Below are positions 3,076 to 54,812 of a DNA stretch of 59,807 nucleotides, piece by piece. This stretch comes from Octopus sinensis (lineage: Eukaryota), in the NCBI RefSeq assembly GCF_006345805.1, contig NW_021832543.1:1-59807 (forward strand), written 5' to 3'. The notes beneath the pieces are model-generated. The model was not told where the DNA came from. It saw only the letters and a program-made list of their open reading frames with translations, and did no database searches. Both the position numbers and the translations under genes were made by a program. Numbering within the stretch: the first letter of the stretch is position 1; every line of letters starts with the position of its first letter.

Positions 3076-3422
3076 AGTGGCTGTGTGGTAAGTAGCTTGC
3101 TAACCAACCACATGGTTCTGGGTTCAGTCCCACTGCATGGCATCTTGGGCAAGTGTCTTCTGCTATAGTGGATTTGGTAGACGGAAACTGAAAGAAGCCC
3201 GTCGTATATATGTATGTGTGTGTGTCTGTGTTTGTTCCCTTCGCATTGCTTGACAACCGATGCTGGTGTGTTTACGTCCCCGTCACTTAGCGGTTCGGCA
3301 AAAAGAGACCGATAGAAGTACTGGGCTTACAAAAGAATAAGTCCCAGGGTCGATTTGCTCGACTAAAGGCGGTGCTCCAGCATGGCCACAGTCAAATGAC
3401 TGAAACAAGTAAAAGAGTAAAA
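3074..3422 (+). mobile_element. Octopus-type tRNA-derived SINE, family A (small internal deletion)
   Basis: Head GGAGTGGCTGTGTGGTAAG...GGTTCAGTCCC (A/B-box-like); tail GGCGGTGCTCCAGCATGGCC...GAAACAAGTAAAAGAG; matches copies at 10397, 21241 and 46953. Confidence 0.85.
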
Positions 3423-3661
3423 TATAATGAACACACACACACACACACACACACACACTACTCTCCGCTCCCATCCACATTACTTTCTTCTCCCCCACCA
3501 CCACAGACCCTTCCCCTTCTCTTCAGGTTTATACTTTGCACCCTGCACTAGCCTACCATTCATCAAAACCATTTTTTTAATATTTTTCGTTGTTTTGTGT
3601 TTTACTAAAGATCCTTAGTTCCCTCACACATTCAACCACACATTTTAACTTCACCATTGAT

Positions 3662-10396: not shown

Positions 10397-10798
10397 GGCG
10401 CAGGAGTGGCTGTGTGATAAGTAGCTTGCTTACCAACCACATGGTTCCGGGTTCAGTCCCACTGCGTGGCATCTTGGGCAAGTGTCTTCTGCTATAGCCT
10501 CGAGCCGACCAATACCTTGTGAATGGATTTAGTAGACGGAAACTGAAAGAAGCCCGTCATATGTATATATATAATATGCATGTGTGTGTTTGTGTATCTG
10601 TGTTTGTCCCCCTAGCATTGCTTGACAACTGATGCTGGTGTGTTTATGTCCCCGTTACTTAGCGGTTCGGCAAAAGAGATCGATAGAATAAGTACTGGGC
10701 TTACAAAAGAATAAGTCCCGGGGTCGAGCTGCTCGACTAAAGGCGGTGCTCCAGCATGGCCGCAGTCAAATGACTGAAACAAGTAAAAGAGTAAGAGT
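10397..10798 (+). mobile_element. Full-length SINE family A
   Basis: GGCGCAGGAGTGGCTGTGTG head, central domain, internal (GT)n and AAGTAAAAGAG tail. Confidence 0.9.
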
Positions 10799-17829: not shown

Positions 17830-19693
17830 ATCTTCTCGGACGAAGAGCATAATCAACACCTTCACCTGCTTTTCGGACGACTACGTCAATTTGGAATTGT
17901 TATCAACCCTACCAAATGTTTGTTCGGAGTTGCTTCCCTTCATTTTCTCGGCCATATAGTCGATAAAAATGGAATTCGTCCCCTTCCCGAGAAAGTCAAG
18001 GCCATCGTGGATTTTCCACCACCCACATCTCTCCGCAAATTAAGGGAATATCTCGGTCTAGCGAATTTCTATCGACGGTTCGTGCCCCACCTCGCTGAAA
18101 TAGCGCAACCGCTCACGGATTTGCTACGTCAGCGAACCTGCAAAAATGCAGATATAGCTCTGACCGAAGATCAACTCGTTTCTTTCGCTGCCCTGAAAAA
18201 AGCGTTATCTAGCGCTACCATGTTGGTTTATCCAAAACCAGACGCCCCACGATGTTTACTCGTTGATGCATCCGATTCCGGAATCGGAGGTGTGCTACAA
18301 CAGCTTGTTGACGGTATATGGCAACCGTTGTCTTTCTTTTCTAAGCGGTTAAAACCCGCGGAAACCAAATACAGCACATTCAGTCGGGAATTATTGGCGG
18401 CATACCTGGCCGTTAAGCATTTCCGTCATATGCTAGAAGGTACCAATTTTGCCATATACACCGACCACAAGCCATTAGTATACGCATTTAACACCAAACC
18501 GGATCGCCATTCGCCAAGAGAAATACGCCACCTCGACTTCATATCGCAGTACACGACGGATATACGCCACATCAAAGGGACGACCAACGTGGCAGCCGAT
18601 GCACTTTCACGTGCGCAGATCAATGCTATCCACACCACGTCTACAATTGATCTGGCACGTATAGCAGCTGACCAGGAGAATGACGAAGAACTTCTAAAGC
18701 TCCGGAATTCGTCATCTCTGAAATTTCAGCATGTTCCGCTACCATCATCCACAGCCCATATTTGGTATGATATTTCCACTGGTTACCAACGCCCTTATGT
18801 ACCACAGAAATATCGTCGAGAAGTTTTCTCCGCTCTACATTCTCTGTCACATCCTGGTATTCGCTCCACTCAAAAGCTAATATCGACCCGTTTTGTGTGG
18901 ACCAGTATCAACAAGGATATCAGAGAATGGACCAAGTGCTGTGTTGCGTGCCAAAAAGCGAAAATCCACCGGCACATAAAATCACCAATCGGTTCATTTT
19001 CGCAGCCCGATGCACGATTTCAGCACGTTCACATTGATATTGTTGGACCCCTGCCACCTTCGCAGAACTATTCATATTTGCTAACTTGCGTAGATAGGTT
19101 CTCGCGATGGCCCGAAGCCTGGCCCCTATCTGATATATCAGCAGAAACGGTCGCTAAAACGCTGATATCACAATGGGTTTCGCGTTTTGGCACACCCGCA
19201 ACAATTACCACCGACAGAGGACGTCAGTTCGATTCCCACCTTTTCACCGAGCTGACTCGTCTCCTCGGGTGTAAACACACCCGCACTACAGCTTACCACC
19301 CTGCAGCAAATGGCATGGTGGAACGCTTTCACCGCCAACTCAAGGCATCTATAAAAGCTGCTCCAGACAGTTCTCACTGGTTGGAACATCTCCCTCTCAT
19401 CCTCCTTGGGGTCATCCTCCTACAAGGTCATCAAAAGAGAACCCAAATATTTCGTCCTCGATATTGGAGGTAAACGAAATACGGTCTCGATTGATCGTTT
19501 AAAAAAAGCTTTCATCGAGGAGGACTTACATTCAGTCCCCTCTTTTCCTCAAACAGACTCGGCAACTCCAGCGAACACCACAGATTCTGCACAACCCCGA
19601 CACACCAAATCAGGAAGAACAGTTCGATGGCCAGCAAGGTTTGTGCAAGTTTTTCGGGTAAGTTCTGAACTCCTAACGTATCCATCTTCCTAA
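17830..19693 (+). pseudogene. pol: Gypsy pol remnant (RT C-terminus, RNase H, integrase; GPY/F tail in a shifted frame)
   Basis: [40 protein letters not shown], zinc-binding [34 protein letters not shown]; [28 protein letters not shown] at 19406-19693. Confidence 0.93.
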
Positions 19694-21240: not shown

Positions 21241-21643
21241 CTCTTTTACTTGTTTCAGTCATTTGACTGCGGCCATGCTGGAGCACCGCCTTTAGTCGAG
21301 CATATCGACCCCGGGACTTATTCTTTGTAAGCCCAGTTCTTATTCTATCGGTCTCTTTTGCCAAACCGCTAAGTGACGGAGACGTAAACACACAAGCATC
21401 GGTTGTCAAGCAATGCTAGGGGGACAAACACAGACACACAAACATATATACACACACACTTATATATATATGCATATATACGACAGGCTTCTTTCAGTTT
21501 CCGTCTACCAAATCCACTCACAAAGCATTGGTCGGCCCGGGTCTATAGCAGAAGACACTTGCCCAAGATGCCACGCAGTGGGACTGAACCCGGAACCATG
21601 TGGTTGGTTAGCAAGCTACTTACCACACAGCCACTCCTGCGCC
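21241..21643 (-). mobile_element. Full-length SINE family A
   Basis: Reverse complement of the 10397 copy. Confidence 0.9.
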
Positions 21644-30806: not shown

Positions 30807-30834
<28 letters not shown>

Positions 30835-30837
<3 letters not shown>

Positions 30838-30945
30838 GCCATGCTGAAGCACCGCCTCGAAAGGGTTAAGTCGAACAAATTGAGCTCAGTACTTTTTTAA
30901 GCCTGGTACATATTCTCTCAGTCTCTTTTGCCGAACCGCTAAGCC
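30835..30945 (-). mobile_element. 3' part of a family A-related SINE
   Basis: GGCCATGCTGAAGCACCGCC...TCTTTTGCCGAACCGCTAAG. Confidence 0.7.
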
Positions 30946-37783: not shown

Positions 37784-37945
37784 GGCACAAGAGTGGCTGT
37801 GTGGTAAGTAGCTTCCTTACCAACCACATGGTTCCGGGTTCAGTCCCCCTGCGTGGCACCTTGGGCAAGTGTCTTCTACTATAGCCTCAGGCTGACAAAA
37901 GGCTTGTGAGTCAATTTTGTAGACGGAAACTGAAAGAAACCCGTC
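37784..37945 (+). mobile_element. SINE family A, 5' half
   Basis: Head and central domain; ends in a TA tract. Confidence 0.8.
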
Positions 37946-38016
37946 ATATATATGCGTGCATATATATATATTTACACATTATATATATATACATAATATA
38001 TATATATGTATATGGA

Positions 38017-38108: not shown

Positions 38109-38324
38109 ATCATCATCATCATCGTTTAACGTCCGTTTTCCGCGCTAGCACGGGTTGGACGGTTTCGACCGGGGTCTGGGGAGCTCGGGACTGCCCCAGG
38201 CTCCAGTCTAGTCTGGCAGTGTTTCTACAGCTGGATGCCCTTCCTAACGCCAACCACTCCGCGAGTGTAGTGGGTGTTTTTTACGTGCCACCTGCACAGG
38301 TGCCAGAGGGGTCTGGCATCGGCC
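38109..38324 (-). mobile_element. Short RTE 3'-end copy, inverted relative to the long RTE
   Basis: Diverged reverse complement of 41880-42087, including the (GAT)n tail and one partial 63-bp unit. Confidence 0.85.
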
Positions 38325-38331
38325 ATATACA

Positions 38332-38417
<86 letters not shown>

Positions 38418-38477
38418 TACATACATACATACATACATAGATACATATATACATACATACATACATATATATATATA

Positions 38478-41400
38478 TGGGTAGGTAAGGTAATCGAGGT
38501 AGTCAGAGTAAGTGACAGAGTAATTAAAATTAGATTAGTCCTTCACCATAGGACAGCTACCATCATCTCGGCATATGCCCCTCAACCAGGGCTACCGGAA
38601 GGACAAAAAGACCAATTCTATGACACCCTATTGCGGACTACCTCATTGACAAATGACAGTGACCTTCTCTTCGTGGCAGGTGATTTCAATGGACATGTTG
38701 GACGACATGTCGGGGGCTTCCATGGCGTCCATGGAGGCTACGGTTTCGGCTCTCGTAATGAGGAGGGAACCAGGCTGCTGGAGTTCTGCGATGCAAATGA
38801 CCTTATGGTCTGCAATACCAACTTCAGGAAACCCACCTCTCACCTAGTCACCTACCGTTCTGGCAGATACACCAGCCAGATTGACTACATCCTTGCCAGA
38901 AAAAGGGAAAGAGGGCTGATTATAAATGCCAAAACCTTTCCAGGCGAAGAATGTACTCCCCAACATAGATTAGTGGCTAGTGACTTCAGGATCAGAGCTA
39001 AATGGTTGCCCAGAAGAAGACCAGCTTGGAGGAGAAGGGTCTGGAAGCTTAAAGATCCTGCAAATGGACAGAGATTTAGAGACATACTACTCTAGGCCTT
39101 TGACGAAATAGAAGGGGATATAGCTTCACTTAATGTGGAAGACAACTGGAGATTCCTTCGGGACAATCTGCTGACAGCCACTGACCAGATCTGTGGATGG
39201 AGCAAAGTACCATCTCGACCCAGAGTAACATGGTGGTGGAACACTGTAGTTGACAGGGCTATTAGACAAAAGAGACAGGCTTGGAAGGACTGGAAGAACG
39301 GTGGTAGCAGGGAATTGTATCAGACAGCCAGAAGGGAAGCTAGGAGACAGGTTTATCTCGCCAGAGGGGAAGCAGATAAGAAAAAATTTGCCAATGTTCT
39401 GAGCCGTGAGGATGAAAGACTTGAGGTATTTCGTGTTGCAAGACAGTGTGTAAGAGAGAATCGTGATGTGGTAGGAGAGAAGTGTGTTCGCATGGATGAT
39501 GGTTCACTTGCGCTAAATGAGGATGCAAAGAGAGAGGTTTGGAGATGCCACTATGAAGGGTTGCTGAATAAAGAAAATGAATGGGATAAAGAGAGTCTGC
39601 CAAATGTTGACCCAACAGAGGGACCAGCTATCCGAGTTGATAGTTCCGTGGTAGCTAAGGCAATTAGAAGCATGAAGACAGGGAAAGCCCCAGGCCCATC
39701 AGGAATTACTGCAGAGATGCTCAAAATATCTGGCAGTGTCAGCTGTAACCTAGTCACCCGTATAGTCAACCAGGTGATACACGAAGGAGTCATACCCAAT
39801 GACTGGTGTAGCAGCATACTAGTCAACTGCTACAAAGGTAAAGGTGATGCCCTGGATATAAATAATTACAGAGGTATCAAGCTGTTGGATCAGGTAATGA
39901 AGGTTACGGAGAGGGTCATAGCCCAACTAATTAGAGAGAGAGTTAGTTTAGATGAGATGCAGTTTGGGTTCGTGCCAGGGAAAAGCACCACTGATGCTAT
40001 ATTCCTGGTAAGGCTACTGCAGGAGAAATACCTAGCCAAAGATAAGCCCCTGTACCTGGCTTTCGTTGACATGGAGAAAGCCTTTGATAGGGTCCCCCGA
40101 TCCCTCATCTGGTGGTCAATGAGGAAACTAGGGATAGATGAATGGCTGGTGAGGGCTGTGCAAGCCATGTACAGAGATGCCGTAAGTAAGGTTAGGGTTG
40201 GCAAATGTACACAGAAGAATTCAAAGTAGAGGTTGGGGTCCACCAGGGTTCAGTACTCAGCCCCCTCCTATTATCATAGTCCTCCAGGCAATTGTGGAGG
40301 AATTCAAGACAGGCTGCCCCTGGGAGCTCCTCTATGCTGACGACCTCGCTCTAATTGCTGAATCACTATCAGAACTGGAGCAGAAGTTCCAGATGTGGAA
40401 GGAGGGTTAGAATCGAGGGGCCTTAGAGTCAACCTAGCTAAAACCAAAGTACTAATAAGTAGAAAGGTAGACAATCCACAAATATCCTCAGGAAGATGGC
40501 CCTGCTCGATCTGTAGAAAAGGTGTAGGTAGAAACTCTATAAGATGTACCCAGTGTAAGCTATGGACACATAAGAGGTGCAGCAATGTCAAAGGTAGGCT
40601 AACTGGGAAGATAGTTTTTGTATGTGGCAGATGCTCGGGAGCATTGACCTCCGAAAATCTGCAGAAACACAACTTCCGTCACTTTCCGGGGGGAAAAGCT
40701 AGAAGTAGTTGATAGCTCCCAATATCTAGGTGACCAAGTCAGTAGTGGGGGTGGGTGCGCTGAAAGTGTAACTGCTAGAATAAGAATAGCCTGGGCAAAG
40801 TTTAGGGAGCTCTTACCTCTGCTGGTGACTAAAGCCTCTCGCTCAGAGTAAAAGGCAGACTGTATGATGCATGTGTACGAACAGCTATGCTACATGGCAG
40901 TGAAACATGGGCCGTGACTGCTGAGGACATGCGTAAGCTCGTGAGGAATGAAGCCAGTATGCTCCGATGGATGTGTAATGTCAGTGTACTTACACGACAG
41001 AGCGTTAGTACCTTGAGAGAAATGTTGTACCTAAGAAGCATCAGTTGTGGTGTGCAAGAGAGACGATTGCGCTGGTATGGTCATGTGGCGAGAATGGATG
41101 AAGATAGGTGTGGGAGAAAGTGCGAATCCCTAGCAGTTGAGGGAACCCGTGGAAGAGGTAGACCCAGGAAAACCTGGGACGAGGTGGTGAAGCACGACCT
41201 TCGGACGTTAGGTCTCACCATGGAAATGACTAGAGACCGAGACCTATGGAAGTATGCCGTGCGTGAGAAGACCCGGCAAGACTAGTGAAGCCATAACCCG
41301 TGGCCCCTACCTGGGACGTAGTCAGTCCACCTGTGCATACCTTCCTTATTGTGGCACTTGAGAAGACCTGTTGAGGCAAGTGAAAATCAAAATCAAAACC

Positions 41401-43025: not shown

Positions 43026-43463
43026 GGTGTGTGTATATCTGTGTCTCTGTCTGTTCCCCAATCCCAACAGTTGCCATCTGGTGAGTGTGTGTTTATGTCC
43101 CCATAAATTAATGGTTTGTTAAAAGAAACCCTTAGAATAAGTCCCAAGCTTTATAATATTAAGTCCTTAGGTTGATAAGTTGGGTGGTGCCCCAGCACGG
43201 CCACAGTCTTAAAAAAGTAAAGAATGATAACATATACACAAAAATGTTTGTATGTGGGTGTATATAAATGGGTGTATGAATGTATATGTTTAGAAATCCC
43301 AAAACTCAAATAGGTTTGATGAATGCGAAGTAAAAACTGTCAATTCTTGTTATTTACACTTGGGTAAGCATTCTCATAAAACACTTTCTTAGAAAGCTTT
43401 TGTTGGATTCTCAACCAAATAGCGTGGGAAAATTTTTACTAGAAAAGTATTACTGTGCATGTA

Positions 43464-43494
<31 letters not shown>

Positions 43495-44039
43495 TTGTAT
43501 ATATATATGTGTGTGTGTATATATATGTATGTATATGCATATATATATTTACTGTAACTGTGTGTGTGTATGTATTTACGTGTATATATATATATGTTTA
43601 ATTATATATGCATATATAAGGGTGTATACTTGTGTATATTTATACCCCTGTACATGTGTGTTTGTGTCTGTGTGTCTGTGTGAATGTGTGGATGCACATT
43701 TCTAGTGTGTTGCACTCATGATACTAAGATTAAGGTTTCAATTCCTGGATTGGGTGATAGATTGTTTTCTTGAGCAACACTCTTCATTCCACTTCCCCCA
43801 ATTTATTCGGCTAGTAAAAACAAGGAATCCAATGATGGCCCACCTTCCTCTTCATTGGGGGAAATATATACATGACAGAATAAGGGAAACCAGCCTTATG
43901 AGTCGATAATTTGTGCAGGAAAGTTTTGATACGGTTTCATAATACACACACGCACAGATATATTATTCTTTTACACGTTTCTTTACACATGTAGCTGTGG
44001 TCATGCTGGAGCACCATCATGGTCTTGCAGCTTTTCTCA

Positions 44040-44165
44040 GTCGTTTGCCCCAGCTGTAATCTTGCGATGTCATCTTTGATTTTTTTATTGCCTCTGATAA
44101 TTTTGTATCGTTAGCATAGCTGGTAACTATGGCTGTCTGAGGGGCCACTGGCATGTCTAAGAGGG
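44040..44165 (-). mobile_element. CR1-like RT fragment around the YADD motif
   Basis: TAIVTSYANDTKLSEAIKK parallels [15 protein letters not shown] of the 46608 copy. Confidence 0.6.
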
Positions 44166-44198
44166 CTACAAATGCATACATACATATAGACATATATG

Positions 44199-44460
44199 TA
44201 TCATCATCATCGTCGTCGTCTTTAACGTCTGCTTCCATGCTGGCATGAATTGGACGGTTTGACTGAGGGCTGGCAAACCAGAAGGCTGCACCAGGCCCCA
44301 ATCTCATCTGGCAAAGTTTCTGCAGTTGGATACCATTCCTAATGCCAACCACTCCGAGAGTGAAGTCGGTGCTTTTTATGTGCCACAGGCATCAGGGCCA
44401 CTCAGGCAGTGCTGGCATCAAGCATGTTTGAATGATGCATTTTACGTGCCACCGTCACAT
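44199..44460 (-). mobile_element. RTE 3'-end copy
   Basis: CATCATCATCGTCGTCGTCTTTAACGTC...GGATACCATTCCTAATGCCAACCACTCCGAGAGTG. Confidence 0.8.
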
Positions 44461-44744: not shown

Positions 44745-45121
44745 TTATTTCTGTAGTTTCAGCTCAGAGCTGCGGCCATGCTGGAGCGACTGCCGTTTTG
44801 CTACACTGTTATTACTGAGTGCCTCCTCCAATATGTGGCACTTGGTAAAGAATGGAGTTTGATGTAGCCACCCTTATTTACACCTCTTGACGTGAGGGAG
44901 GTTCATCTGAGACTCTCAACAGGAAGAGGTCCAGCTTTGATTTAAAATCTCCTACATTTACTTTGTGCAAGTTCTTCAGGTTCTTTAAGAGGATATTAAA
45001 AAGCTGTGGGCCCCTGAAATCCAGACTGTTGCAGTAACTGGTCCCGAAGTGCGATGGCATTGCTGGAATCTTTGGCACTATGCAGTGTCGTCCTGTTCTG
45101 GCATTGGTGTAGCTTTCAATG
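44745..45121 (-). mobile_element. CR1-like LINE 3' fragment with tail
   Basis: [14 protein letters not shown]...[10 protein letters not shown]...KSKLDLFL.RVSDEP; tail GTTTCAGCTCAGAGCTGCGGCCATGCTGGAGC. Confidence 0.85.
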
Positions 45122-45384
45122 ACAAAATTTATATATATGTATATATATATGTGTGTGTGCGTATTATTTATATATATATATATAAATATAAACACACACA
45201 CACACACACACGCGTATTATGTATATGTATACATATATATATATATATATGTATTATTTATTTATATATATATACGCACACACACATATGTATGTATGTA
45301 TATATATGTGTGTGTATATATATATTTCGATTTTGGATTTGGTTTGCAAAATTCTTTATGTGAGTTCGTGTGTTGAAGCACATT

Positions 45385-45595: not shown

Positions 45596-46608
45596 GATTG
45601 ATTGATTGATTGATTGATTCTAGTTTCAGCTTATGAGCTGTGGCCATGCTGGGCACCGCCATTTGGTGTTGCTACTTGGTTTTACTTCACGAAAGCTTTT
45701 TAGCAACTGCCATTTGGTGCATGAGAGAGTTCGATGCAGCTGCCCTCATCTGCACCTCCTGCCGTGAAGTTGGTTCATCTGGGACACCTGACAGGAAGAG
45801 ATCCAGTTTCATTTTAAAGACATCTGCATCCACCCCATGCAGGTCTCTCAGGTTCTTCGGGAGGATATTGAAGAGCTGTGGGCCACGGAAGCCCCGGCTA
45901 TCACAGAATCTTGTCCTACATCTTGATGGCAAACTTGGAGTCCTAGGCACCACGCAGTGGCGCCCAGTTCTGGCATTTGCGTAACTCCCGATGCCAAAGT
46001 TTAGGACACGTCCCTCCAGGATCTTCCAGATGTATATTATGGCATATCTTTCCCGCCTACGCTTCAAGGAATATAGTTTTAATCTCTTGAGTCTTTCCCA
46101 GTAGCTTACATTCTGCATAGAGGCTATCTTCTTCGTGTAGCTGCGTTGGATCGCCTCGAGCTCTGTGATCAACTTGACACTGGATGGTGACCATAACTGA
46201 GAGCAGTAGTCAAAGTGGCTTAGGACAAGTGTCCTCCAGAGGACCATCATGGTTTCTTGTTCTCTTGTTCTAAAGGTTCTGAGGATCCATCCGGCCAGTC
46301 GTCTACATTTCATTGCCAATTTAGCAACATGTACATGAAAGGTTGCGTTGTCACTCATGTAAATACCCAGGTCACGCACTGATTGTGCCTCTGGGATTGC
46401 TATTCCTCCGGGTCCAGTGTATTCATTGGGTATTGCATTTAGTTTTGCATGCTGATAGTATAAAGCTTGAAACTTTTCAGCATTGAACTGCATGCTATTC
46501 TTTTCAGCCCACTTGTATATTTTGTCCAGCTCACATTGCAGGCGTTTAGTGTTCTCAGGGTTCTGTATTGCCTGTGAAACTTTTGTATCATCTGCATAAC
46601 TTGTGATC
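45596..46608 (-). mobile_element. 5'-truncated CR1-clade LINE (open from YADD to stop; 3' UTR; (AATC)n tail)
   Basis: SYADDTK (YADD at 46587-46598), [38 protein letters not shown]; stop at 45687; (GATT)n at 45596-45619. Confidence 0.92.
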
Positions 46609-46952
46609 GTATATATATGTATATATATGTATATGTATATATATGTATATATATGTATATGTATATATATGTATATATATGTATATATATGTATATGTAT
46701 GTATATATATGTATATGTATGTTTATGTATGTATAATATATAATATATATATATATTATATATATATATGCACACACACGCACATGTATTTGATGGGTAG
46801 AGTGAGTGAAAGTACAGCATGAACATTTCATCACTGTAAAGGAATTGTTTCTGCAGACCTTTGGGCAAAAGATGGATGCTCGTATGTTGTTTTCAATTGG
46901 AGTGTCCATCACACATACATATGCATATATACACACACACATATATATATAT

Positions 46953-47338
46953 GTAGAAGTGGCTGTTTTGTCAGTAGATTGCTTACCAACCACATGGTTC
47001 TGTGTTCAGTCCCACTGCGTGGCACCTTGGGCAAGTGTCTTCTGCTATAGCCTCGGGCCGACCAAAGCCTTGTGAGTGAATTTGGTAGACGGAAACTGGA
47101 AGAAGCCCGTCGTATATATGTATATATATGTATGTGTGTATATGTTTGTCCCCCCACCATTGCTTGACAACCAATGCTGGTGTGTTTATGTCCCTGTAAC
47201 TTAGCGATTCAGCAAAAGAGACTGATAGAATAAGTACTAGGCTTACAAAGAATAAGTCCTGGGGTCGATTTACTCTACTTGAAGGTGGTGCTCCAGCATG
47301 GCCGCAGTCAAAAGACTGAAACAAGTAAACGAGAGAAA
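46953..47338 (+). mobile_element. Full-length SINE family A
   Basis: Matches the 10397 copy throughout. Confidence 0.88.
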
Positions 47339-47575
47339 AGATATATATAACACACATATATTAACATATGTGTGAACATAACCATGTAAATATATTTACT
47401 TGTATGTGTATGTTGATCTTTTACTGGATCCTGCAGTCATTAAATTGCGGCCAAGCAATTTTTTATATATTTTATATTTTATATATTTTGTATATTATTA
47501 TTTTTATTTGTCTTGGTTTATGTTTTACTCTGTTTGATTTGCCTAATAGTGCTTTTATCTCTAATTTAATTATTT

Positions 47576-47674
<99 letters not shown>

Positions 47675-47770
47675 ATATATATATGTAGGTCCCGGGTTGA
47701 TTCGGGGTTAACCACAGTAAATAAGGTACTCAATACATAGCAGAGTAAAATTAATTTATTATATAGAAGG

Positions 47771-47821
47771 AGCTTCTACAGAACTAGAACTGTTTCATTC
47801 AAGAGAAATCATCAGGAAGCT
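47771..47821 (-). ncRNA. Type-I hammerhead ribozyme motif, copy 1
   Basis: Minus strand: AGCUUC CUGAUGA UUUCUCUUGAAU GAAA CAG UUCUAGUU CUG UA / GAAGCU; 6-bp stem I, 4-bp stem III, GUA triplet; the 10.1-11.1 pair is U.U rather than the usual G-C. Confidence 0.7.
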
Positions 47822-48124
47822 AGTTAACAAGAATTGTATTGGCATTTATACATTTAGGCAGGTTTAAAGGGGTGGTGGTGGGGGACTTTTTGGGGGTAGG
47901 CATAGCGCAAAAATATCATACTTGGGGGGAGTGGTCAAGGAGTCAGTGGTAAATTAGATAAAAGAATAAATAAAAGAATAAAAAATATATAGAAGAATAG
48001 AGTTTTAGGTAAATAAGGAGATTCTCACTTATACATATACACATGTATATATACACACACACACACATATACATACACACATACATACCACACCACACTA
48101 TATATACATATACATATACAACAC

Positions 48125-48164
<40 letters not shown>

Positions 48165-48334
48165 CATATATATGCACATATATATACACACACACATGTA
48201 TATATACACACACGACCACACATACATATACACACAAAAATATATACATACACACACATGCACATACACACATACACACACATATCCACATACACACATG
48301 CACACACAAGTCCCTATATACACATATATACATA

Positions 48335-48368
<34 letters not shown>

Positions 48369-48770
48369 CATATGTGTACCTATACATACCTACACATACA
48401 CACATATACATACAAATACAAACCCATTCCCTAATTTTAATTTTATTATTATCTTCATTTATTACTTTTGTTATCTTTGACCGCGGGTCACAGGCATCTT
48501 GGCTACGACAGCAAGTCCATTATCTTTCTACTTGAACACAAGCACTCACTCACGCACACACTCATTAGCACGCACACTCACTCATTCGTACACTCATACA
48601 CATACACGCACGCACGCGTTATATTCATACATACATACATCTACATACATTCACATTTATACACATACGTACGCGTACCTACAGATTCATGTCTACACGC
48701 TTAGAAGACTAGTCCGTACATATACACCAATAAATATATATACAACATACATATACACACCTACATACAA

Positions 48771-48824
<54 letters not shown>

Positions 48825-48965
48825 GTATATATACATACATACATACACCCATACATACATACATATATACCATACACATACCCACACACATATACATATA
48901 CATACATATACGTGCATACATACACATACATATACATACATATACACATACATATATATATATAC

Positions 48966-49018
<53 letters not shown>

Positions 49019-49378
49019 CATACATGTACATACATACATATACATATATACACACACACATACATACACATATACATACACACACATACACATATACATG
49101 CGTACCCATACACACACACACGCGCATCCATATATACTCATAAGTACACACATGCGTCAAAGTATACATATATCTATACATATGCTTACACATACACACA
49201 CACACACGCACCTCCTTATGTTCATATACTTGCATGCATACTCAAAAAATAAATAATAAAATATATATACGTGCAGTTATACATATACATACATGCATAC
49301 TCAAAAAATAAATAATAAATATTAAGTATATATACGTGCAGTTACCTATTATACAGACGGATACATACATATAAACTT

Positions 49379-49423
<45 letters not shown>

Positions 49424-49554
49424 CTTACACATATGTACATATACATACACACATACATAACTCTACGTACCTACATATACATAAACACACGAGCGTACAC
49501 GTATATGTACATATACACATACACATACACACACATACATACATACATATACAT

Positions 49555-49590
<36 letters not shown>

Positions 49591-49872
49591 CAACAATTGA
49601 GGGTAAAGTTAATTAGTTATTAATCAATTTCACCAAGTATTCAGTATGTAAAAGGACCATTATTTTTGAGTAAACATTGTCTGAGAGAAATTTTCTTTAA
49701 GTAGTGGAAATGGCTAAAAAACTTTTTTGGCTGCTATTTCTAGAAAGTTCAGTATGTGGCAAAGTAATTTATTTTACTAAGCCCTAATTATATAATATTT
49801 TATATATACATACATATATATACACACATACATATACACATACATATGCATACACACATATATATACATATA

Positions 49873-49906
<34 letters not shown>

Positions 49907-50052
49907 TACATATATATATATTTTTACATATACATATTGTGTATATGTGTGTATGTATATGTATGTGTGTGTGTGTATATATATATGGTGTGTGTGTATG
50001 TGTGTATATGTTATATGTATGTATCATCATCATCATCATCATCATGTTTACG

Positions 50053-50095
<43 letters not shown>

Positions 50096-50756
50096 TGTGT
50101 GTATGTATATGTATGTATGTATGTGTGTGTATGTGTATGTGTATATGTACATATACGTGTACGCTCGTGTGTTTATGTATATGTAGGTACGTAGAGTTAT
50201 GTATGTGTGTATGTATATGTACATATGTGTAAGTATGTATATATATATATATTATATATATATATATATATGTGTGTGTGTAAGTTTATATGTATGTATC
50301 CGTCTGTATAATAGGTAACTGCACGTATATATACTTAATATTTATTATTTATTTTTTGAGTATGCATGTATGTATATGAATAACTGCACGTATATATATT
50401 TTATTATTTATTTTTTGAGTATGCATGTAAGTATATGAACATAAGGAGGCGCGTGTGTGTGTGTGTATGTGTAAGCATATGTATAGATATATGTATACTT
50501 TGACGCATGTGTGTACTTATGTGTATATATGGATGCGCGTGTGTGTGTGTGTATGGGTATGCATGTATATGTGTATGTGTGTGTATGTATATGTGTATGT
50601 ATGTGTGTGTATATATGTATATGTATGTATGTACATGTATGTATGTGTATATATATATATATATATATATGTAGGTCCCGGGTTGATTCGGGGTTAACCA
50701 CAGTAAATAAGGTACTCAATACATAGCAGAGTAAAATTAATTTATTATATAGAAGG

Positions 50757-50807
50757 AGCTTCTACAGGACTAGAACTGTTTCATTCAAGAGAAATCTTCA
50801 GGAAGCT
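50757..50807 (-). ncRNA. Type-I hammerhead ribozyme motif, copy 2 (CUGAAGA core)
   Basis: Same fold; N7=A; stem III loop UUCUAGUC; predicted cleavage after 50763. Confidence 0.7.
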
Positions 50808-51097
50808 AGTTAACAAGAATTGTATTGGCATTTATACATTTAGGCAGGTTTAAAGGGGTGGTGGTGGGGGACTTTTTGGGGGTAGGCAAAGCGCAAAATA
50901 TCATACTTGGGGGAGTGGTCAAGGAGTCAGTGGTAAATTAGATAAAAGAATGAATAAAAGAATAAAAGAATAAAAAAATAAAAAAATATATATAGAAGAA
51001 TAGAGTTTTAGGTAAATAAGGAGATTCTCACTTATACCTATACACATATGTATACATATATATACACACACACACACATATACATACACTCATACAT

Positions 51098-51142
<45 letters not shown>

Positions 51143-51471
51143 TGTACCTATACATACGTACACATACACACATATTATTACATACAAATACAAGACCCAT
51201 TCCCTAATTTTAATTTTATTATCTTCATTTATTACTTTTGTTATCTTTGACCGCTGGTTACAAGCATCTTGGCTACGACAGCAAGTCCATTTATCTTTCT
51301 ACTTGAAAACAAGCACTCATTCACGCACGCACACTCACTCATTCGGACACTCATACACATACACGCACGCGTTATATTCATACATACATACATCCACATA
51401 CGCGTACCCACAGATTCATGTCTACACTCTTAGAAGGCTAGTCTATGTATTGTATGTAGGTGTATATGCAG

Positions 51472-51527
<56 letters not shown>

Positions 51528-51873
51528 ATATATATTTATTGGTGTATATGTATAGACTAGCCTTCTAAGAGTGTAGACATGAATCTGTGGGTACGCGTAT
51601 GTGGATGTATGTATGTATGAATATAACGCGTGCGTGTATGTGTATGAGTGTACGAATGAGTGAGTGTGCGTGCTAATGAGTGTGCGTGTGTGAATGAGTG
51701 CTTGTTTTCAAGTAGAAAGATAAATGGACTTGCTGTCGTAGCCAAGATGCTTGTGACCAGCGGTCAAAGATAACAAAAGTAATAAATGAAGATAATAAAA
51801 TTAAAATTAGGGAATGGGTCTGTATTTGTATGTGTATATATATGTGTGTATGTGTACGTATGTATAGGTACAC

Positions 51874-51919
<46 letters not shown>

Positions 51920-52208
51920 ATGTATGAGTGTATGTATATGTATGTGTGTGTGTATATATGTATACATATGTGTATAGGTATAAGTGAGAATCTCCTTATT
52001 TACCTAAAACTCTATTCTTCTATATATTTTTTTTTATTTTTTTATTCTTTTATTCTTTTATTCATCCTTTTATCTAATTTACCACTGACTCCTTGACCAC
52101 TCCCCCAAGTATGATATTTTGCACTATGCCTACCCCCAAAAAGTCCCCCACCACCACCCCTTTAAACCTGCCTAAATGTATAAATGCCAAATACAATTCT
52201 TGTTAACT

Positions 52209-52259
52209 AGCTTCCTGAAGATTTCTCTTGAATGAAACAGTTCTAGTCCTGTAGAAGCT
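52209..52259 (+). ncRNA. Type-I hammerhead ribozyme motif, copy 3 (CUGAAGA core)
   Basis: AGCTTC CTGAAGA TTTCTCTTGAAT GAAA CAG TTCTAGTC CTG TA GAAGCT; predicted cleavage after 52253. Confidence 0.7.
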
Positions 52260-52453
52260 CCTTCTATATAATAAATTAATATATATATATATATGTATAT
52301 ATATATGTATGTATATATATATATGTATGTGTATATGTATGTATATGTATGTGTATGTATGCACGTATATGTATGTATATGTACATGTGTGGGTATGTGT
52401 ATGTGTATATATATGTATGTATGTATGGGTGTATGTATGTATGTATATATACG

Positions 52454-52486
<33 letters not shown>

Positions 52487-52904
52487 TATATATATATGTA
52501 TTTGTATGTAGGTGTATATGTATGTGTGTATATATATTTATTGGTGTATATGTATGGACTAGTCTTCTAAGCGTGTAGACATGAATCTGTAGGTACGCGT
52601 ACGTATGTGTATAAATGTGAATGTATGTAGATGTATGTATGTATGAATATAACGCGTGCGTGCGTGTATGTGTATGAGTGAGTGTGCGTGCTAATGAGTG
52701 TGCGTGCTAATGAGTGTGCGTGCGTGAGTGAGTGCTTGTGTTCGAGTAGAAAGATAAATGGACTTGCTGTCGTAGCCAAGATGCTTGTGACCCGCGGTCA
52801 AAGATAACAAAAGTAATAAATGAAGATAATAATAAAATTAAAATTAGGGAATGGGTTTGTATTTGTATGTATATGTGTGTATGTGTAGGTATGTATAGGT
52901 ACAC

Positions 52905-52984
<80 letters not shown>

Positions 52985-53143
52985 ATATATGGACTTGTGT
53001 GTGCATGTGTGTATGTAGATATGTGTGTGTATGTGTGTATGTGTATGTGTGTGTATGTATATATTTTTGTGTGTATATGTATATGTATATATGTGTGTGT
53101 GTGTGTGTATATATACATGTGTGTGTGTATATATATGTGCATA

Positions 53144-53186
<43 letters not shown>

Positions 53187-53495
53187 GTGTGTGTATATGT
53201 ATATGTATATATGTGTGTGTGTGTATGTATGTGTGTATGTATATGTGTGTGTGTGTGTGTGTATATATATACATATGTGTATATGTATAAGTGAGAATCT
53301 CCTTATTTACCTAAAACTCTATTCTTCTATATATTTTTTTATTCTTTTATTTATTCTTTTATCTAATTTACCACTGACTCCTTGACCCCTCCCCAAAGTA
53401 TGATATTTTTGCGCTATGTCTACCCCCAAAAGTCCCCCACCCCACCCCTTTAAACCTGCCTAAATGTATAAATGCCAATACAATTCTTGTTAACT

Positions 53496-53546
53496 AGCTT
53501 CCTGATGATTTCTCTTGAATGAAACAGTTCTAGTCCTGTAGAAGCT
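53496..53546 (+). ncRNA. Type-I hammerhead ribozyme motif, copy 4 (CUGAUGA core)
   Basis: AGCTTC CTGATGA TTTCTCTTGAAT GAAA CAG TTCTAGTC CTG TA GAAGCT; predicted cleavage after 53540. Confidence 0.7.
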
Positions 53547-53557
53547 CCTTCTATATA

Positions 53558-53616
<59 letters not shown>

Positions 53617-53935
53617 TATATACATATACATGTATATACATTCATATATATATATATATATACACGCACACAATGAAAATTAAAATATTGCAAAACAAAT
53701 GTCTTACTTTCCAGTCAAATAAAACACCAGGTTAAGGTAGAAGAATAAATATAGATTAGTGGTACAACAAGGCACCAATGTTTACTGGAAATAGCAGTCA
53801 ATAGATTTACGACCCTGTAGTAAAGCTTCACTGTGTATATATACTGGGAAAGACGCGTGAAGGCTGGGAACATAAAGACTTCCATCTTACCTCTAGGAAG
53901 AACATTAGATAAATGAACAACCCGGAATCGGATAA

Positions 53936-54000
53936 TCTAGTACCTAGGTTTCAGACCCTTTAAATACGTTTGTAAATTTGATTAGTCTTCTTCATTTAGA
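53936..54000 (-). ncRNA. Decayed minimal hammerhead motif of a second family
   Basis: Minus strand: UCUAA AUGAAGA AGAC...GUCU GAAAC CUAG GUA CUAGA; two substitutions (C3, stem I 2.1) from a perfect fold with palindromic stem III ACCUAGGU. Confidence 0.45.
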
Positions 54001-54147
54001 TATACCTGGACAATACTTCAAATGTATATATATATATATATATATATATACGTAATAATGAAGGGTGAAATTAATTAATTTGGAAAAATTATCAATTACA
54101 CCAAGTAGTCTTCGGCATGTAAAAGCCTCATTCGAGGAAAATTTAAG

Positions 54148-54293
54148 TAATACTAAGCAATAAGGGTTTAGCAACGAGTTGCCTTACCACATACCGAATT
54201 TAGAAATAGAAATAGCTATAACCCTTTGACTGCTATTTCTAAATTCGGTATGTGGTAAGGCAACTCGTTGCTAAACCTTATTGCTTAGTATTA
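54148..54293. repeat. Palindrome, ~61-bp arms, 23-nt loop
   Basis: 54148-54209 vs 54233-54293, identical except for one G indel. Confidence 0.95.
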
Positions 54294-54306
54294 TATATAT
54301 ATATAT

Positions 54307-54387
<81 letters not shown>

Positions 54388-54812
54388 TATATGTATACAT
54401 ATATACTATTGTTTTATTGTTTTCTTTTACTCATTTCAGTCATGCAGCTGTGGTCATGCTGGAGCACCACCATATATACATATATAGACAGATAGATAGA
54501 CAGACAGACTGAGTTTCTTACTTAAAAGCAATTTCCAAAGTCTTCTCCTTTCTTCCGTGGGGTGGAGGGTGGAGGGTGTATCAGATTTCTTTTCACACAG
54601 TCTTCATGTCTGCCCAGGTCTTGAGGGGTGTGGCACATCCCTACGCACACACATTAGCATGCAGGTGGTTGCACACACGCATACATATATACACACACAT
54701 ACACATGAATAGAAATTGCAAGAGGTCAAAATAATAAGCAAAAAAAAAAAAGAGAAAAAGGAAAAAAAAAACCGGTTGTTGTGCATTATTGAATGAAAGG
54801 ATTAATACCTGC

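What the first reader, a model, noticed from the sequence alone, without database searches (positions are those of the whole stretch)
47685..53560. Triple-nested ~5.9-kb foldback built from a hammerhead-carrying non-coding module
Seen: the whole interval is palindromic at three levels, A+B+C+ [D+ spacer D-] [A+B+ spacer B-A-] C-B-A-. Diagnostic variants link copy 1 with 4 (CCGCGGGTCA, CTGATGA core, GCGCAAAAAT) and copy 2 with 3 (CCGCTGGT, CTGAAGA core), so two separate inversion events are recorded. Arms differ by scattered substitutions and microsatellite lengths. Known: Penelope-like elements carry hammerheads in their pseudo-LTRs and often leave inverted partial pLTR copies. Inference: this is a non-autonomous, ORF-less, ribozyme-bearing element that propagates by foldback/template-switch retroposition and carries microsatellites with it. 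I do not know of such a nested architecture being described in Octopus.
Basis: partly seen in the sequence, partly recalled or inferred. Interest (0 to 1): 0.88.

Follow-up and report, generated by a model that had tools for sequence, protein, structure and literature searches.

The report
Nested inverted repeats with hammerhead-like motif
A 5.9-kb non-coding stretch is really two inverted-repeat structures, the younger one inserted inside the older at a TA microsatellite, each arm carrying a hammerhead-ribozyme-like motif near its outer end; this looks like the known insertion style of Penelope-like retroelements, not a new kind of element, but a purely local DNA rearrangement cannot be excluded.

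Summary
The inverted-repeat architecture is real and far beyond chance.

It is better read as two palindromes than three nested levels:
- **P1** has about 1.9-kb arms (47685-49590, and 50066-50670 plus 52281-53568).
- **P2** (50671-52280) is a discrete 1,610-bp insertion in a (TA)n tract of P1's right arm. With P2 removed in silico, the two P1 arms align end to end.

Other findings:
- All four A-B copies point their hammerhead-sense 3' ends outward, and each palindrome is flanked by (TA)n.
- In both palindromes only the left arm carries a 65-nt terminal extension.
- The region has no Pfam-recognisable coding capacity and is about 44% microsatellite.
- The hammerhead-like motif has an intact core, a 6-bp helix I and a 4-bp helix III. 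It is rare by chance (0.023 per shuffled window). Helix II is weak, and no Rfam hammerhead model matches it.
- A and B have no other copy in the remaining ~54 kb, so mobility is unproven.

Best reading (about 0.47): insertions of a non-autonomous Penelope-like element, primed on both DNA strands. Main rival (about 0.33): fold-back duplication at hairpin-prone (TA)n. This would be a new member of a known kind, of moderate interest. The organism could not be verified.

The parts
47571..47684 (.). (TA)n tract flanking the left end of P1 (putative target tract)
   Evidence: TRF, period 2, 59.5 copies
47685..47749 (-). 65-nt terminal extension ('tail') of copy 1. It is present only on the left arm of P1 and is the 3' end in hammerhead-sense orientation. 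It can form a CCCG/CGGG stem-loop.
   Evidence: Alignment of the four A copies. 100% identical to 50671-50746. Fold.
47750..48030 (-). Module A, copy 1
   Evidence: BLAST and nhmmer find four copies only
47771..47821 (-). Hammerhead-like motif, copy 1: AGCUUC-CUGAUGA-U-UUC-UCUU-GAA-U-GAA-ACAG-UUCUAGUU-CUGU-A-GAAGCU. Predicted cleavage lies between 47777 and 47776.
   Evidence: Descriptor search. Energy of the hammerhead fold is -7.9 kcal/mol against an MFE of -8.2. No Rfam match.
48031..48414 (.). CA/TA microsatellite block between A1 and B1
   Evidence: TRF
48415..48735 (-). Module B, copy 1
48736..49590 (-). Modules C and D of the P1 left arm. They are mostly microsatellite, with a unique core at 49110-49407.
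   Evidence: Single collinear HSP with the right arm once P2 is removed. D arms are 1.0-1.7% divergent.
49591..49799 (+). Segment X, unique to the left side of the P1 centre. It is a diverged relative of 54057-54281.
   Evidence: nhmmer E=1.2e-8; BLAST
49800..50065 (.). Degenerate CA-to-TG microsatellite around the symmetry centre of P1 (about 49890-49935)
   Evidence: Local inverted alignment scores 43.5 against shuffles of 14.8 +/- 3.3. GC-skew flip.
50066..50670 (+). D-, the inner part of the P1 right arm
50671..52280 (.). P2, a 1,610-bp inverted pair inserted in the (TA)n at the C/D boundary of the P1 right arm. It consists of tail 50671-50735, A2 50736-51033, microsatellite, B2 51187-51444, an extra 5' segment of copy 3 at 51445-51553, B3 51554-51826, microsatellite, and A3 51982-52280 (no tail).
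   Evidence: Self-palindrome 50736-52280 at 93.6%. Empty-site alignment. Alignments.
50757..50807 (-). Hammerhead-like motif, copy 2 (core CUGAAGA; only the free position N7 differs)
52209..52259 (+). Hammerhead-like motif, copy 3 (core CUGAAGA)
52281..53568 (+). Outer part of the P1 right arm: C- 52281-52535, B4 52536-52863, microsatellite 52864-53288, A4 53289-53568 (no tail)
53496..53546 (+). Hammerhead-like motif, copy 4 (core CUGAUGA). Predicted cleavage lies between 53540 and 53541.
53552..53662 (.). (TA)n tract flanking the right end of P1
   Evidence: TRF

Best explanation
The locus holds two insertions of one ORF-less, hammerhead-bearing retroelement family of the Penelope-like (PLE or pseudo-LTR-derived, retrozyme-related) kind.

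Proposed mechanism for each insertion (inferred):
1. Both strands of a (TA)n tract were cut.
2. Each 3'-OH primed reverse transcription of a template RNA.
3. The two cDNA copies therefore point inward, with their 3' (hammerhead) ends at the outside and their 5' ends meeting in the middle.
4. Unequal 5' truncation left the 109-nt asymmetric centre of P2.
5. Use of two alternative reverse-transcription start sites left a 65-nt 'tail' on one arm only.

The older event made P1, with arms of about 1.9 kb. The younger event, from a template about 3-5% diverged, put P2 into a (TA)n tract inside P1's right arm. The microsatellites were already in the template and were copied with it.

Shown: the anatomy, the nesting, the tree of the copies, the (TA)n junctions, the motif and the lack of coding capacity.

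Inferred: the RNA intermediate, use of PLE enzymes in trans, and ribozyme activity.
For: 1. P2 is a discrete insertion. With 50671-52280 removed, P1's right arm aligns to its left arm in one HSP of 1905 columns (93.8%, 27 mismatches), and the junction lies inside (TA)n.
2. P2 is made of the terminal part (A-B-start of C) of the same unit that ends P1. All four copies share the A end and differ at the other end. That is the pattern expected from target-primed reverse transcription with 5' truncation.
3. In hammerhead-sense orientation every copy has its 3' end outward. In both palindromes the left arm has the 65-nt extension and the right arm lacks it.
4. The tree is ((1,4),(2,3)) with 12 supporting sites and none conflicting. 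Between-pair divergence exceeds within-pair divergence (86/2143 against 19/1148, Fisher p=1.6e-4). Taken at face value, P2's source was neither copy 1 nor copy 4 after P1 formed.
5. The hammerhead descriptor hits only these four sites in the window. It is expected 0.023 times per dinucleotide-shuffled window under loose settings, and 0/300 at the motif's own strength. The only differences among copies fall at free position N7 and in loop 3.
6. Published PLE traits match:
- Inverted 5'-truncated copies, a one-sided 30-40-bp tail and (TA)n bias (PMC8557442).
- Cleavage and extension of both strands, AT-rich targets, and two reverse-transcription start sites that define the tail (PMC11167929).
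- Hammerheads on opposite strands 100-700 bp apart (PMC4209133).
- A U.U mismatch at the base of helix II in axolotl retrozyme hammerheads (PMC7229834).
- Retrozymes proposed as non-autonomous PLE derivatives (doi 10.64898/2026.07.22.740005).
Against: - There is no copy of A or B in the other ~54 kb. A ~400-bp interspersed repeat next door has six or more copies there.
- No PLE reverse transcriptase or GIY-YIG ORF is in the window. The neighbouring reverse-transcriptase fragments are LINE and Ty3/Gypsy.
- No Rfam hammerhead model matches, even at E<=10.
- Helix II is only 3 A/U-rich bp plus a U.U mismatch. Helix III (4 bp, 8-nt loop) is unlike the minimal PLE hammerheads.
- In 81-nt context, another fold is preferred.
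- The tail is 65 nt, not 30-40.
- About 44% of the unit is microsatellite, which is odd for a retroelement body.
- Arm-to-arm gene conversion could create the (1,4)|(2,3) tree without any outside source.
- P1 is nearly spacer-less at its centre, which also fits a DNA hairpin origin.
Confidence: 0.47

Rival explanations
1. This is a purely DNA-level rearrangement. (TA)n tracts are self-complementary and hairpin-prone. Breaks or stalled forks at them led to fold-back priming or microhomology-mediated template switching, which made first one inverted duplication and then another from nearby sequence. The hammerhead-like motif is either a coincidence or a relic of an old element that merely sits in the duplicated DNA.
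For: - Every junction lies in or next to (TA)n or an AT-rich run.
- All copies lie within 6 kb, with none elsewhere in the window.
- P1's centre is almost spacer-less and sits in a CA/TG microsatellite.
- P2 has the short asymmetric spacer typical of fold-back inversions.
- The truncated ends of copies 3 and 4 fall in the run TTAATTTATTATATAG, which offers microhomology to (TA)n.
- Within-pair divergences of P1 and P2 do not differ significantly (p=0.17 and 0.68).
- Palindrome arms are known to homogenise by gene conversion (general knowledge), which would explain the tree.
Against: - It needs several coincidences. P2 would have to reuse exactly the same left terminus as P1, and the same truncation point on the right to within about 8 nt.
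- All copies share the hammerhead-side end and vary only at the other end.
- It leaves unexplained a motif expected 0.023 times per window, placed near the outward ends in the orientation that the retroelement model predicts.
Confidence: 0.33
2. P1 and P2 are non-autonomous foldback-type DNA transposons. They have long terminal inverted repeats that share outer ends and vary internally, and they inserted at TA sites.
For: - Two units with long inverted arms share outer sequence (A-B) but differ in arm length and loop.
- One sits inside the other within (TA)n.
- Neither has coding capacity.
Against: - The termini are not symmetric. In both units the right end lacks the 65 nt present at the left end.
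- No target-site duplication can be read in (TA)n.
- No transposase is in the window.
- No other copy is in the window.
- It does not explain the hammerhead-like motif.
Confidence: 0.07
3. This is an assembly artefact. A fold-back chimeric long read, or a mis-join in microsatellite-rich sequence, created inverted copies that do not exist in the genome.
For: - Palindromes centred on microsatellites are a known failure mode of long-read assemblies (general knowledge).
- Several arm differences are homopolymer-length changes.
- PLE-type structures are reported to trouble assemblies (PMC8557442).
Against: - The arms are not mirror images. P2 (1,610 bp) is private to the right arm and X (209 bp) to the left arm.
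- P2 has a 109-nt asymmetric centre.
- There are 1.1-2.2% substitutions, with transitions and transversions both present, and two distinct sequence versions each occur in both orientations.
Confidence: 0.05

Closest known systems
Penelope-like elements (PLEs) and their pseudo-LTR insertions
   Same: - A hammerhead motif lies near the terminal repeat.
- Insertions occur as inverted, 5'-truncated head-to-head copies.
- A terminal extension is present at one end only.
- Insertion goes into AT-rich or (TA)n DNA.
- Hammerheads sit on opposite strands a few hundred bp apart.

   Different: - There is no reverse transcriptase or GIY-YIG ORF here or elsewhere in the window.
- The extension is 65 nt, not 30-40.
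- The hammerhead has a 4-bp helix III and a weak 3-bp helix II. The minimal PLE form has a long helix II and almost no helix III.
- The body is about 44% microsatellite.
- Homology to any known PLE could not be tested.
Animal non-LTR retrozymes (type I hammerhead tandem repeats; proposed non-autonomous PLE derivatives)
   Same: Both are ORF-less elements with a type I-style hammerhead. A U.U mismatch at the base of helix II is seen in the axolotl HHR_Amex2 motifs. A link to PLEs has been proposed.
   Different: Retrozymes are head-to-tail tandem arrays of short units. Here the copies are in inverted pairs, and same-strand motifs are 1,287 and 2,986 bp apart. No circular RNA evidence is available.
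Fold-back inverted duplications and palindromes formed at hairpin-prone AT-rich repeats
   Same: Both show inverted arms with a short asymmetric spacer, junctions in self-complementary (TA)n, and arms kept similar to each other.
   Different: Such events have no reason to reuse the same unit termini twice, or to carry a ribozyme-like motif near each outward end.
Foldback (FB-type) DNA transposons
   Same: Both have long inverted arms rich in simple repeats, shared outer ends, variable inner parts, and mostly no coding capacity.
   Different: The ends here are asymmetric (65 nt missing on the right in both units), and no readable target-site duplication or transposase is present.

Membership tests
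Hammerhead ribozyme (type I) | Conserved core: C3-U4-G5-A6-N7-G8-A9, G12-A13-A14, the A15.1-U16.1 pair, and H17 not G | tested here: met
   All four copies read CUGA(U/A)GA ... GAA-A ... U-A. The only core difference is at the free position N7.
Hammerhead ribozyme (type I) | Three helices around the core, with helices II and III closed by loops and helix I open | tested here: inconclusive
   Helix I is 6 bp and helix III is 4 bp with an 8-nt loop. Helix II is only UUC/GAA with a U.U mismatch at 10.1/11.1. The hammerhead fold is -7.9 and -7.3 kcal/mol, within about 1 kcal of the MFE for the isolated 51-mer. It is not the MFE in 81-nt context.
Hammerhead ribozyme (type I) | Match to the curated covariance models (Rfam hammerhead families) | tested here: not met
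   No hit at gathering threshold. No hammerhead family appears at E<=10 on 131-nt and 61-nt stretches.
Hammerhead ribozyme (type I) | More frequent than chance | tested here: met
   A loose descriptor gives 0.023 hits per dinucleotide-shuffled window, and 0/300 at the motif's own helix lengths. The real window has only these four sites, which are one family and not independent.
Hammerhead ribozyme (type I) | Compensatory changes in helices, or self-cleavage | not testable with these tools
   The stems do not vary among the four copies. Cleavage needs a bench assay.
Penelope-like element (autonomous) | ORF with a telomerase-like reverse transcriptase plus a GIY-YIG endonuclease | tested here: not met
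   All region ORFs of 120 aa or more are microsatellite-encoded and have no Pfam hit. The largest window ORFs scanned are Ty3/Gypsy pol and LINE APE/RT fragments. Not every window ORF was scanned.
PLE-type insertion / non-autonomous PLE derivative | Inverted or tandem 5'-truncated copies that share the 3' end | tested here: met
   The four copies share the A (hammerhead) end and differ at the inner end. The 3' ends point outward in both pairs.
PLE-type insertion / non-autonomous PLE derivative | Optional terminal extension ('tail') present at one end only | tested here: inconclusive
   A 65-nt extension is on the left arm only, in both P1 and P2. Published tails are 30-40 bp.
PLE-type insertion / non-autonomous PLE derivative | AT-rich or (TA)n target | tested here: met
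   Both ends of P1 and of P2 abut (TA)n. The whole region is rich in (TA)n, so the test is weak.
PLE-type insertion / non-autonomous PLE derivative | Dispersed multi-copy family, and sequence homology of the terminal region to an autonomous PLE | not testable with these tools
   No other copy is in the window. The source genome is not in any collection I could search.
Non-LTR retrozyme | Head-to-tail tandem repeats with a hammerhead in each unit | tested here: not met
   Copies form inverted pairs. Same-strand motifs are 1,287 and 2,986 bp apart and are separated by other sequence.
Foldback DNA transposon | Symmetric terminal inverted repeats and a target-site duplication | tested here: not met
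   The right termini of both units lack the 65 nt found at the left termini. A target-site duplication is unreadable in (TA)n.

The most novel reading that the evidence does not exclude
This is an uncatalogued family of ORF-less, hammerhead-bearing elements that borrow Penelope-like enzymes and integrate as inverted dimers by priming on both strands of (TA)n. This locus would then be a natural footprint of two behaviours so far reported from a single in vitro study of one PLE protein: both-strand cleavage and extension, and dual reverse-transcription start sites. The family would also carry and spread long microsatellite blocks.
Probability: 0.3. Interest if true: 0.55.

Novelty: new member of a known kind. 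Interest (0 to 1): 0.35.

Why it matters
If the retroelement reading holds, the locus gives a clean, datable example of one inverted-pair insertion nested inside another. The example shows that the PLE insertion style (both strands primed, alternative start sites, (TA)n targets) can operate on a non-coding passenger sequence, and that such passengers can move kilobase-scale microsatellite blocks. It also offers a hammerhead variant with a stable helix III and a minimal helix II that current covariance models miss. If the DNA-level reading holds, it is an ordinary example of palindrome formation at AT-rich microsatellites. Either way, one locus cannot carry a general claim.

Tried and rejected
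- **Rfam.** I scanned at gathering threshold and at E<=10 on the region and on short stretches. No hammerhead family appeared. The many sub-threshold miRNA hits (mir-297, mir-3149, MIR4208 and others) are CA/TG/TA microsatellite or palindrome hairpins, and I disregarded them. A SNORD102 hit (17 bits, E about 1) reflects only UGAUGA plus a terminal stem, and there is no D box.
- **tRNA-derived SINE head.** ARAGORN finds no tRNA. The tail has only a degenerate B-box-like T-arm. In that orientation the copies would have variable 3' ends, which does not fit retroposition.
- **Coding capacity.** All six frames of A are stop-ridden. ORFs of 120 aa or more in the region have no Pfam hit.
- **PLE ORF next door.** The 393-aa ORF at 45687-46868(-) carries a reverse-transcriptase fragment with a YADD motif. 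From its C-terminal sequence I judge it LINE-type (CR1/L2-like), not PLE.
- **Independent copies of the locus or family.** Two exact-protein look-ups found nothing. Two metagenome pattern scans found nothing. No supplementary PLE consensus sequences were held.
- **Organism check.** The Ty3/Gypsy pol ORF has best hits at only about 63% identity and no cephalopod names.
- **Single fold-back of a tandem pair (1+2+ to 1+2+3-4-).** I rejected this because D and the tail are missing from the right arm. Removing P2 restores perfect collinearity of A-B-C-D with its mirror.
- **Selection on the motif.** Zero changes fall in the 37 constrained positions. Given roughly 5% variable columns in A, I estimate that about two would be expected, so this is uninformative.

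Full report

Yes. A dust-filtered self-BLAST of 47000-54500 finds two inverted matches: 50736-52280 against itself (93.6% over 1572 columns) and 48990-49590 against 50670-50066 (97.7%). An unfiltered BLAST with a periodicity filter recovers all module pairs.

Searching module A (47685-48030) and module B (48415-48735) against the whole 59.8-kb window gives exactly four copies of each, all inside the interval:
- A at 47685-48030 (+), 50671-51033 (+), 51982-52280 (-) and 53289-53568 (-).
- B at 48415-48735 (+), 51187-51443 (+), 51534-51826 (-) and 52536-52863 (-).

Profile searches with nhmmer --max find nothing further.

On ungapped columns of A+B, substitution divergence is as follows:

| Pair | Divergence |
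|---|---|
| 2 v 3 | 1.1% |
| 1 v 4 | 2.2% |
| 1 v 2 and 1 v 3 | 3.3-3.4% |
| 2 v 4 and 3 v 4 | 4.6-4.8% |

Twelve sites and three indels of 16-24 nt support (1,4)|(2,3), and none supports another split. Between-pair divergence exceeds within-pair divergence (Fisher p=1.6e-4). About 44% of 47685-53568 is microsatellite.

**2. A simpler anatomy**

Copies 3 and 4 lack the first 65 nt of A (GTAGGTCCCGGGTTGATTCGGGG...), which copies 1 and 2 share at 100% identity.

When 50671-52280 is removed in a script and the rest of the right side is reverse-complemented, it aligns to 47751-49590 in a single HSP. That HSP has 1905 columns, 93.8% identity, 27 mismatches and 91 gap positions. The deletion point falls inside a (TA)n run that is uninterrupted in the left arm.

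So the interval is two palindromes, not three nested levels.
- **P1** is [tail-A-B-C-D] | centre | [D-C-B-A], with arms of about 1.9 kb.
- **P2** is [tail-A-B] | 109 nt | [B-A], 1,610 bp, inserted at the C/D boundary of P1's right arm.

The 109-nt centre of P2 (51445-51553) is the start of C in minus orientation, contiguous with copy 3. Copy 3 is therefore simply longer than copy 2 at the inner end, and the two abut at 51444/51445.

P1's centre (49591-50065) has two parts:
- A 209-bp segment X that is private to the left side. It has a diverged relative at 54057-54281 (nhmmer E=1.2e-8).
- A degenerate CA-to-TG microsatellite that is itself weakly palindromic about 49890-49935 (score 43.5 against shuffles of 14.8 +/- 3.3).

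Each end of P1 and of P2 abuts (TA)n.

**3. The hammerhead claim**

On the minus strand of copies 1 and 2, and the plus strand of copies 3 and 4, the sequence reads AGCUUC-CUGA(U/A)GA-U-UUC-UCUU-GAA-U-GAA-ACAG-UUCUAGU(U/C)-CUGU-A-GAAGCU.

- **Core.** It has the full hammerhead core, a 6-bp helix I, a 4-bp helix III starting with A-U, and A at the cleavage position.
- **Chance rate.** A descriptor search finds only these four sites in the window. In 300 dinucleotide shuffles a loose descriptor gives 0.023 hits per window, and the motif's own helix lengths give none.
- **Folding.** The isolated 51-mer takes the three-helix fold at -7.9 and -7.3 kcal/mol, within about 1 kcal/mol of its MFE.
- **Weak helix II.** Helix II is only three A/U-rich pairs with a U.U mismatch at its base.
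- **Competing fold.** In 81-nt context a competing hairpin (GUAGAAGCUCCUUCUAU) is preferred, and the fold is no better than shuffles (z about -1).
- **No Rfam match.** No Rfam hammerhead model matches at gathering threshold or at E<=10 on 131-nt and 61-nt stretches.
- **No stem variation.** The stems do not vary among the copies, so covariation cannot be tested.
- **Precedent.** A U.U mismatch at the base of helix II is reported for the axolotl HHR_Amex2 motifs (PMC7229834).

I rate it a plausible, non-canonical type I hammerhead, not a demonstrated one.

**4. What is around it**

The region has no coding capacity. A is stop-ridden in all frames, and the long ORFs in the region are microsatellite translations with no Pfam hit.

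The window is rich in transposable elements:
- A Ty3/Gypsy pol ORF (17920-19473).
- A LINE with endonuclease and reverse-transcriptase domains (38274-40229).
- A reverse-transcriptase fragment just to the left (45687-46868, minus strand), which I judge LINE-type and not PLE.
- A ~400-bp interspersed repeat at 46955-47356 with at least six copies in the window.

That last repeat is a useful control. High-copy repeats are easy to see in this window, and A/B is not one of them.

I could not verify the organism. The Gypsy ORF's best database hits are about 63% identical and carry no cephalopod names.

**5. Mechanism**

Read in hammerhead-sense orientation, all four copies share the same logic:
- The hammerhead side is a common 3' end that faces outward.
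- The inner (5') end varies. Copy 2 stops at the end of B, copy 3 runs 109 nt further, and copies 1 and 4 run through D.
- There are two alternative 3' ends 65 nt apart, with the long one on the left arm in both palindromes.
- The short ends fall in the run UAUAUAAUAAAUUAAU, which can pair with a (TA)n primer.

This is what published work describes for Penelope-like elements:
- Insertions are 5'-truncated, often with an inverted truncated copy alongside. A 30-40-bp tail occurs at one end only, and some clades show a (TA)n bias (PMC8557442).
- The purified Anolis PLE protein cleaves and extends both DNA strands, prefers AT-rich DNA, and starts reverse transcription at two internal sites whose interval is the tail (PMC11167929).
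- Minimal hammerheads occur on opposite strands 100-700 bp apart (PMC4209133).
- Animal retrozymes have been proposed to be non-autonomous PLE derivatives.
- Octopus vulgaris is reported to have Penelope families (PMC13282606), which matters only if the window is from Octopus.

I therefore favour two PLE-type insertions primed on both strands, of an ORF-less hammerhead-bearing element, the younger nested in the older (confidence 0.47). The RNA intermediate and the enzyme source are inferred, not shown.

**6. Rivals**

*DNA-level fold-back duplication (0.33).* A break or stalled fork at hairpin-prone (TA)n could explain several features:
- All junctions lie in (TA)n.
- All copies are local.
- P1's centre is nearly spacer-less.
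- P2 has an asymmetric spacer.

Arm-to-arm gene conversion could produce the (1,4)|(2,3) tree. It could also explain why the P1 and P2 arm divergences do not differ significantly (p=0.17 and 0.68).

This rival needs coincidences. The left terminus would have to be reused exactly, and the right truncation point to within about 8 nt. It also ignores the motif.

*Foldback-type DNA transposon (0.07).* This fits the shared outer ends and variable inner parts. It fails on the asymmetric termini.

*Assembly artefact (0.05).* This is unlikely for three reasons:
- Each arm has a private insertion (P2 of 1,610 bp, X of 209 bp).
- P2's centre is asymmetric.
- Two sequence versions each occur in both orientations with 1-2% substitutions.

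**7. Novelty and verdict**

The architecture is already described for PLEs. What would be new is:
- A non-coding, microsatellite-laden passenger family.
- An unusual hammerhead variant.
- A cleanly nested pair of insertions.

That amounts to a new member of a known kind, resting on one locus.

The decisive tests need the source genome, reads and a cleavage assay, none of which were available here. They are copy number and termini genome-wide, a PLE partner, empty sites in relatives, spanning reads and self-cleavage.

Noticed in passing
46955-47356; copies at 3076-3437, 10402-10791, 21241-21638(-), 37792-37971, partial 30834-30943(-) and 43087-43208: A ~400-bp interspersed repeat (80-87% identity between copies) lies directly left of the structure. 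It is SINE-like in size and abundance and is unrelated to modules A and B.
   Followed up: partly
54057-54293, with a hairpin at 54148-54293: A ~230-bp element includes a 146-nt near-perfect hairpin (88% complementary). It sits next to a (TA)n run and is a diverged relative of segment X (49591-49799) at the centre of P1. It may be a TA-targeting MITE-like family. Rfam gives only sub-threshold miRNA-like hits there (mir-299, 47.9 bits against 67).
   Followed up: partly
45687-46868(-), 44878-45207(-), 44017-44352(-): These are reverse-transcriptase and C-terminal fragments, which I judge LINE-type (CR1/L2-like). A TA/CA microsatellite lies inside the longest ORF.
   Followed up: partly
17920-19473(+): This is a Ty3/Gypsy pol ORF (RNase H, integrase zinc finger, integrase core). 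Its best database relatives are only about 63% identical, so the source genome seems absent from the protein collection.
   Followed up: yes
38274-40229(+): Two adjacent ORFs carry LINE endonuclease (Exo_endo_phos_2) and reverse-transcriptase domains.
   Followed up: partly
47688-47708 and 50674-50694: The 65-nt tail begins with a degenerate tRNA T-arm / B-box-like sequence (TCCCG-GGTTGATT-CGGGG). ARAGORN calls no tRNA, so its meaning is unclear.
   Followed up: partly
48001-52000: GC skew flips from -0.50 (48001-50000) to +0.29 (50001-52000). This reflects the CA-rich to TG-rich microsatellite switch across the palindrome centre.
   Followed up: yes
49223-49340 and the mirror at 50320-50440: A ~59-nt tandem duplication (GCATGCATACTCAAAAAATAAATAATAAA...CGTGCAGTTA) lies inside module D and is present in both arms.
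   Followed up: no
50024-50052: An (ATG/CAT)6 run plus GTTTACG is present only on the right side of P1's centre, at the position where the left side carries segment X. The centre is therefore not a clean insertion/empty-site pair.
   Followed up: partly
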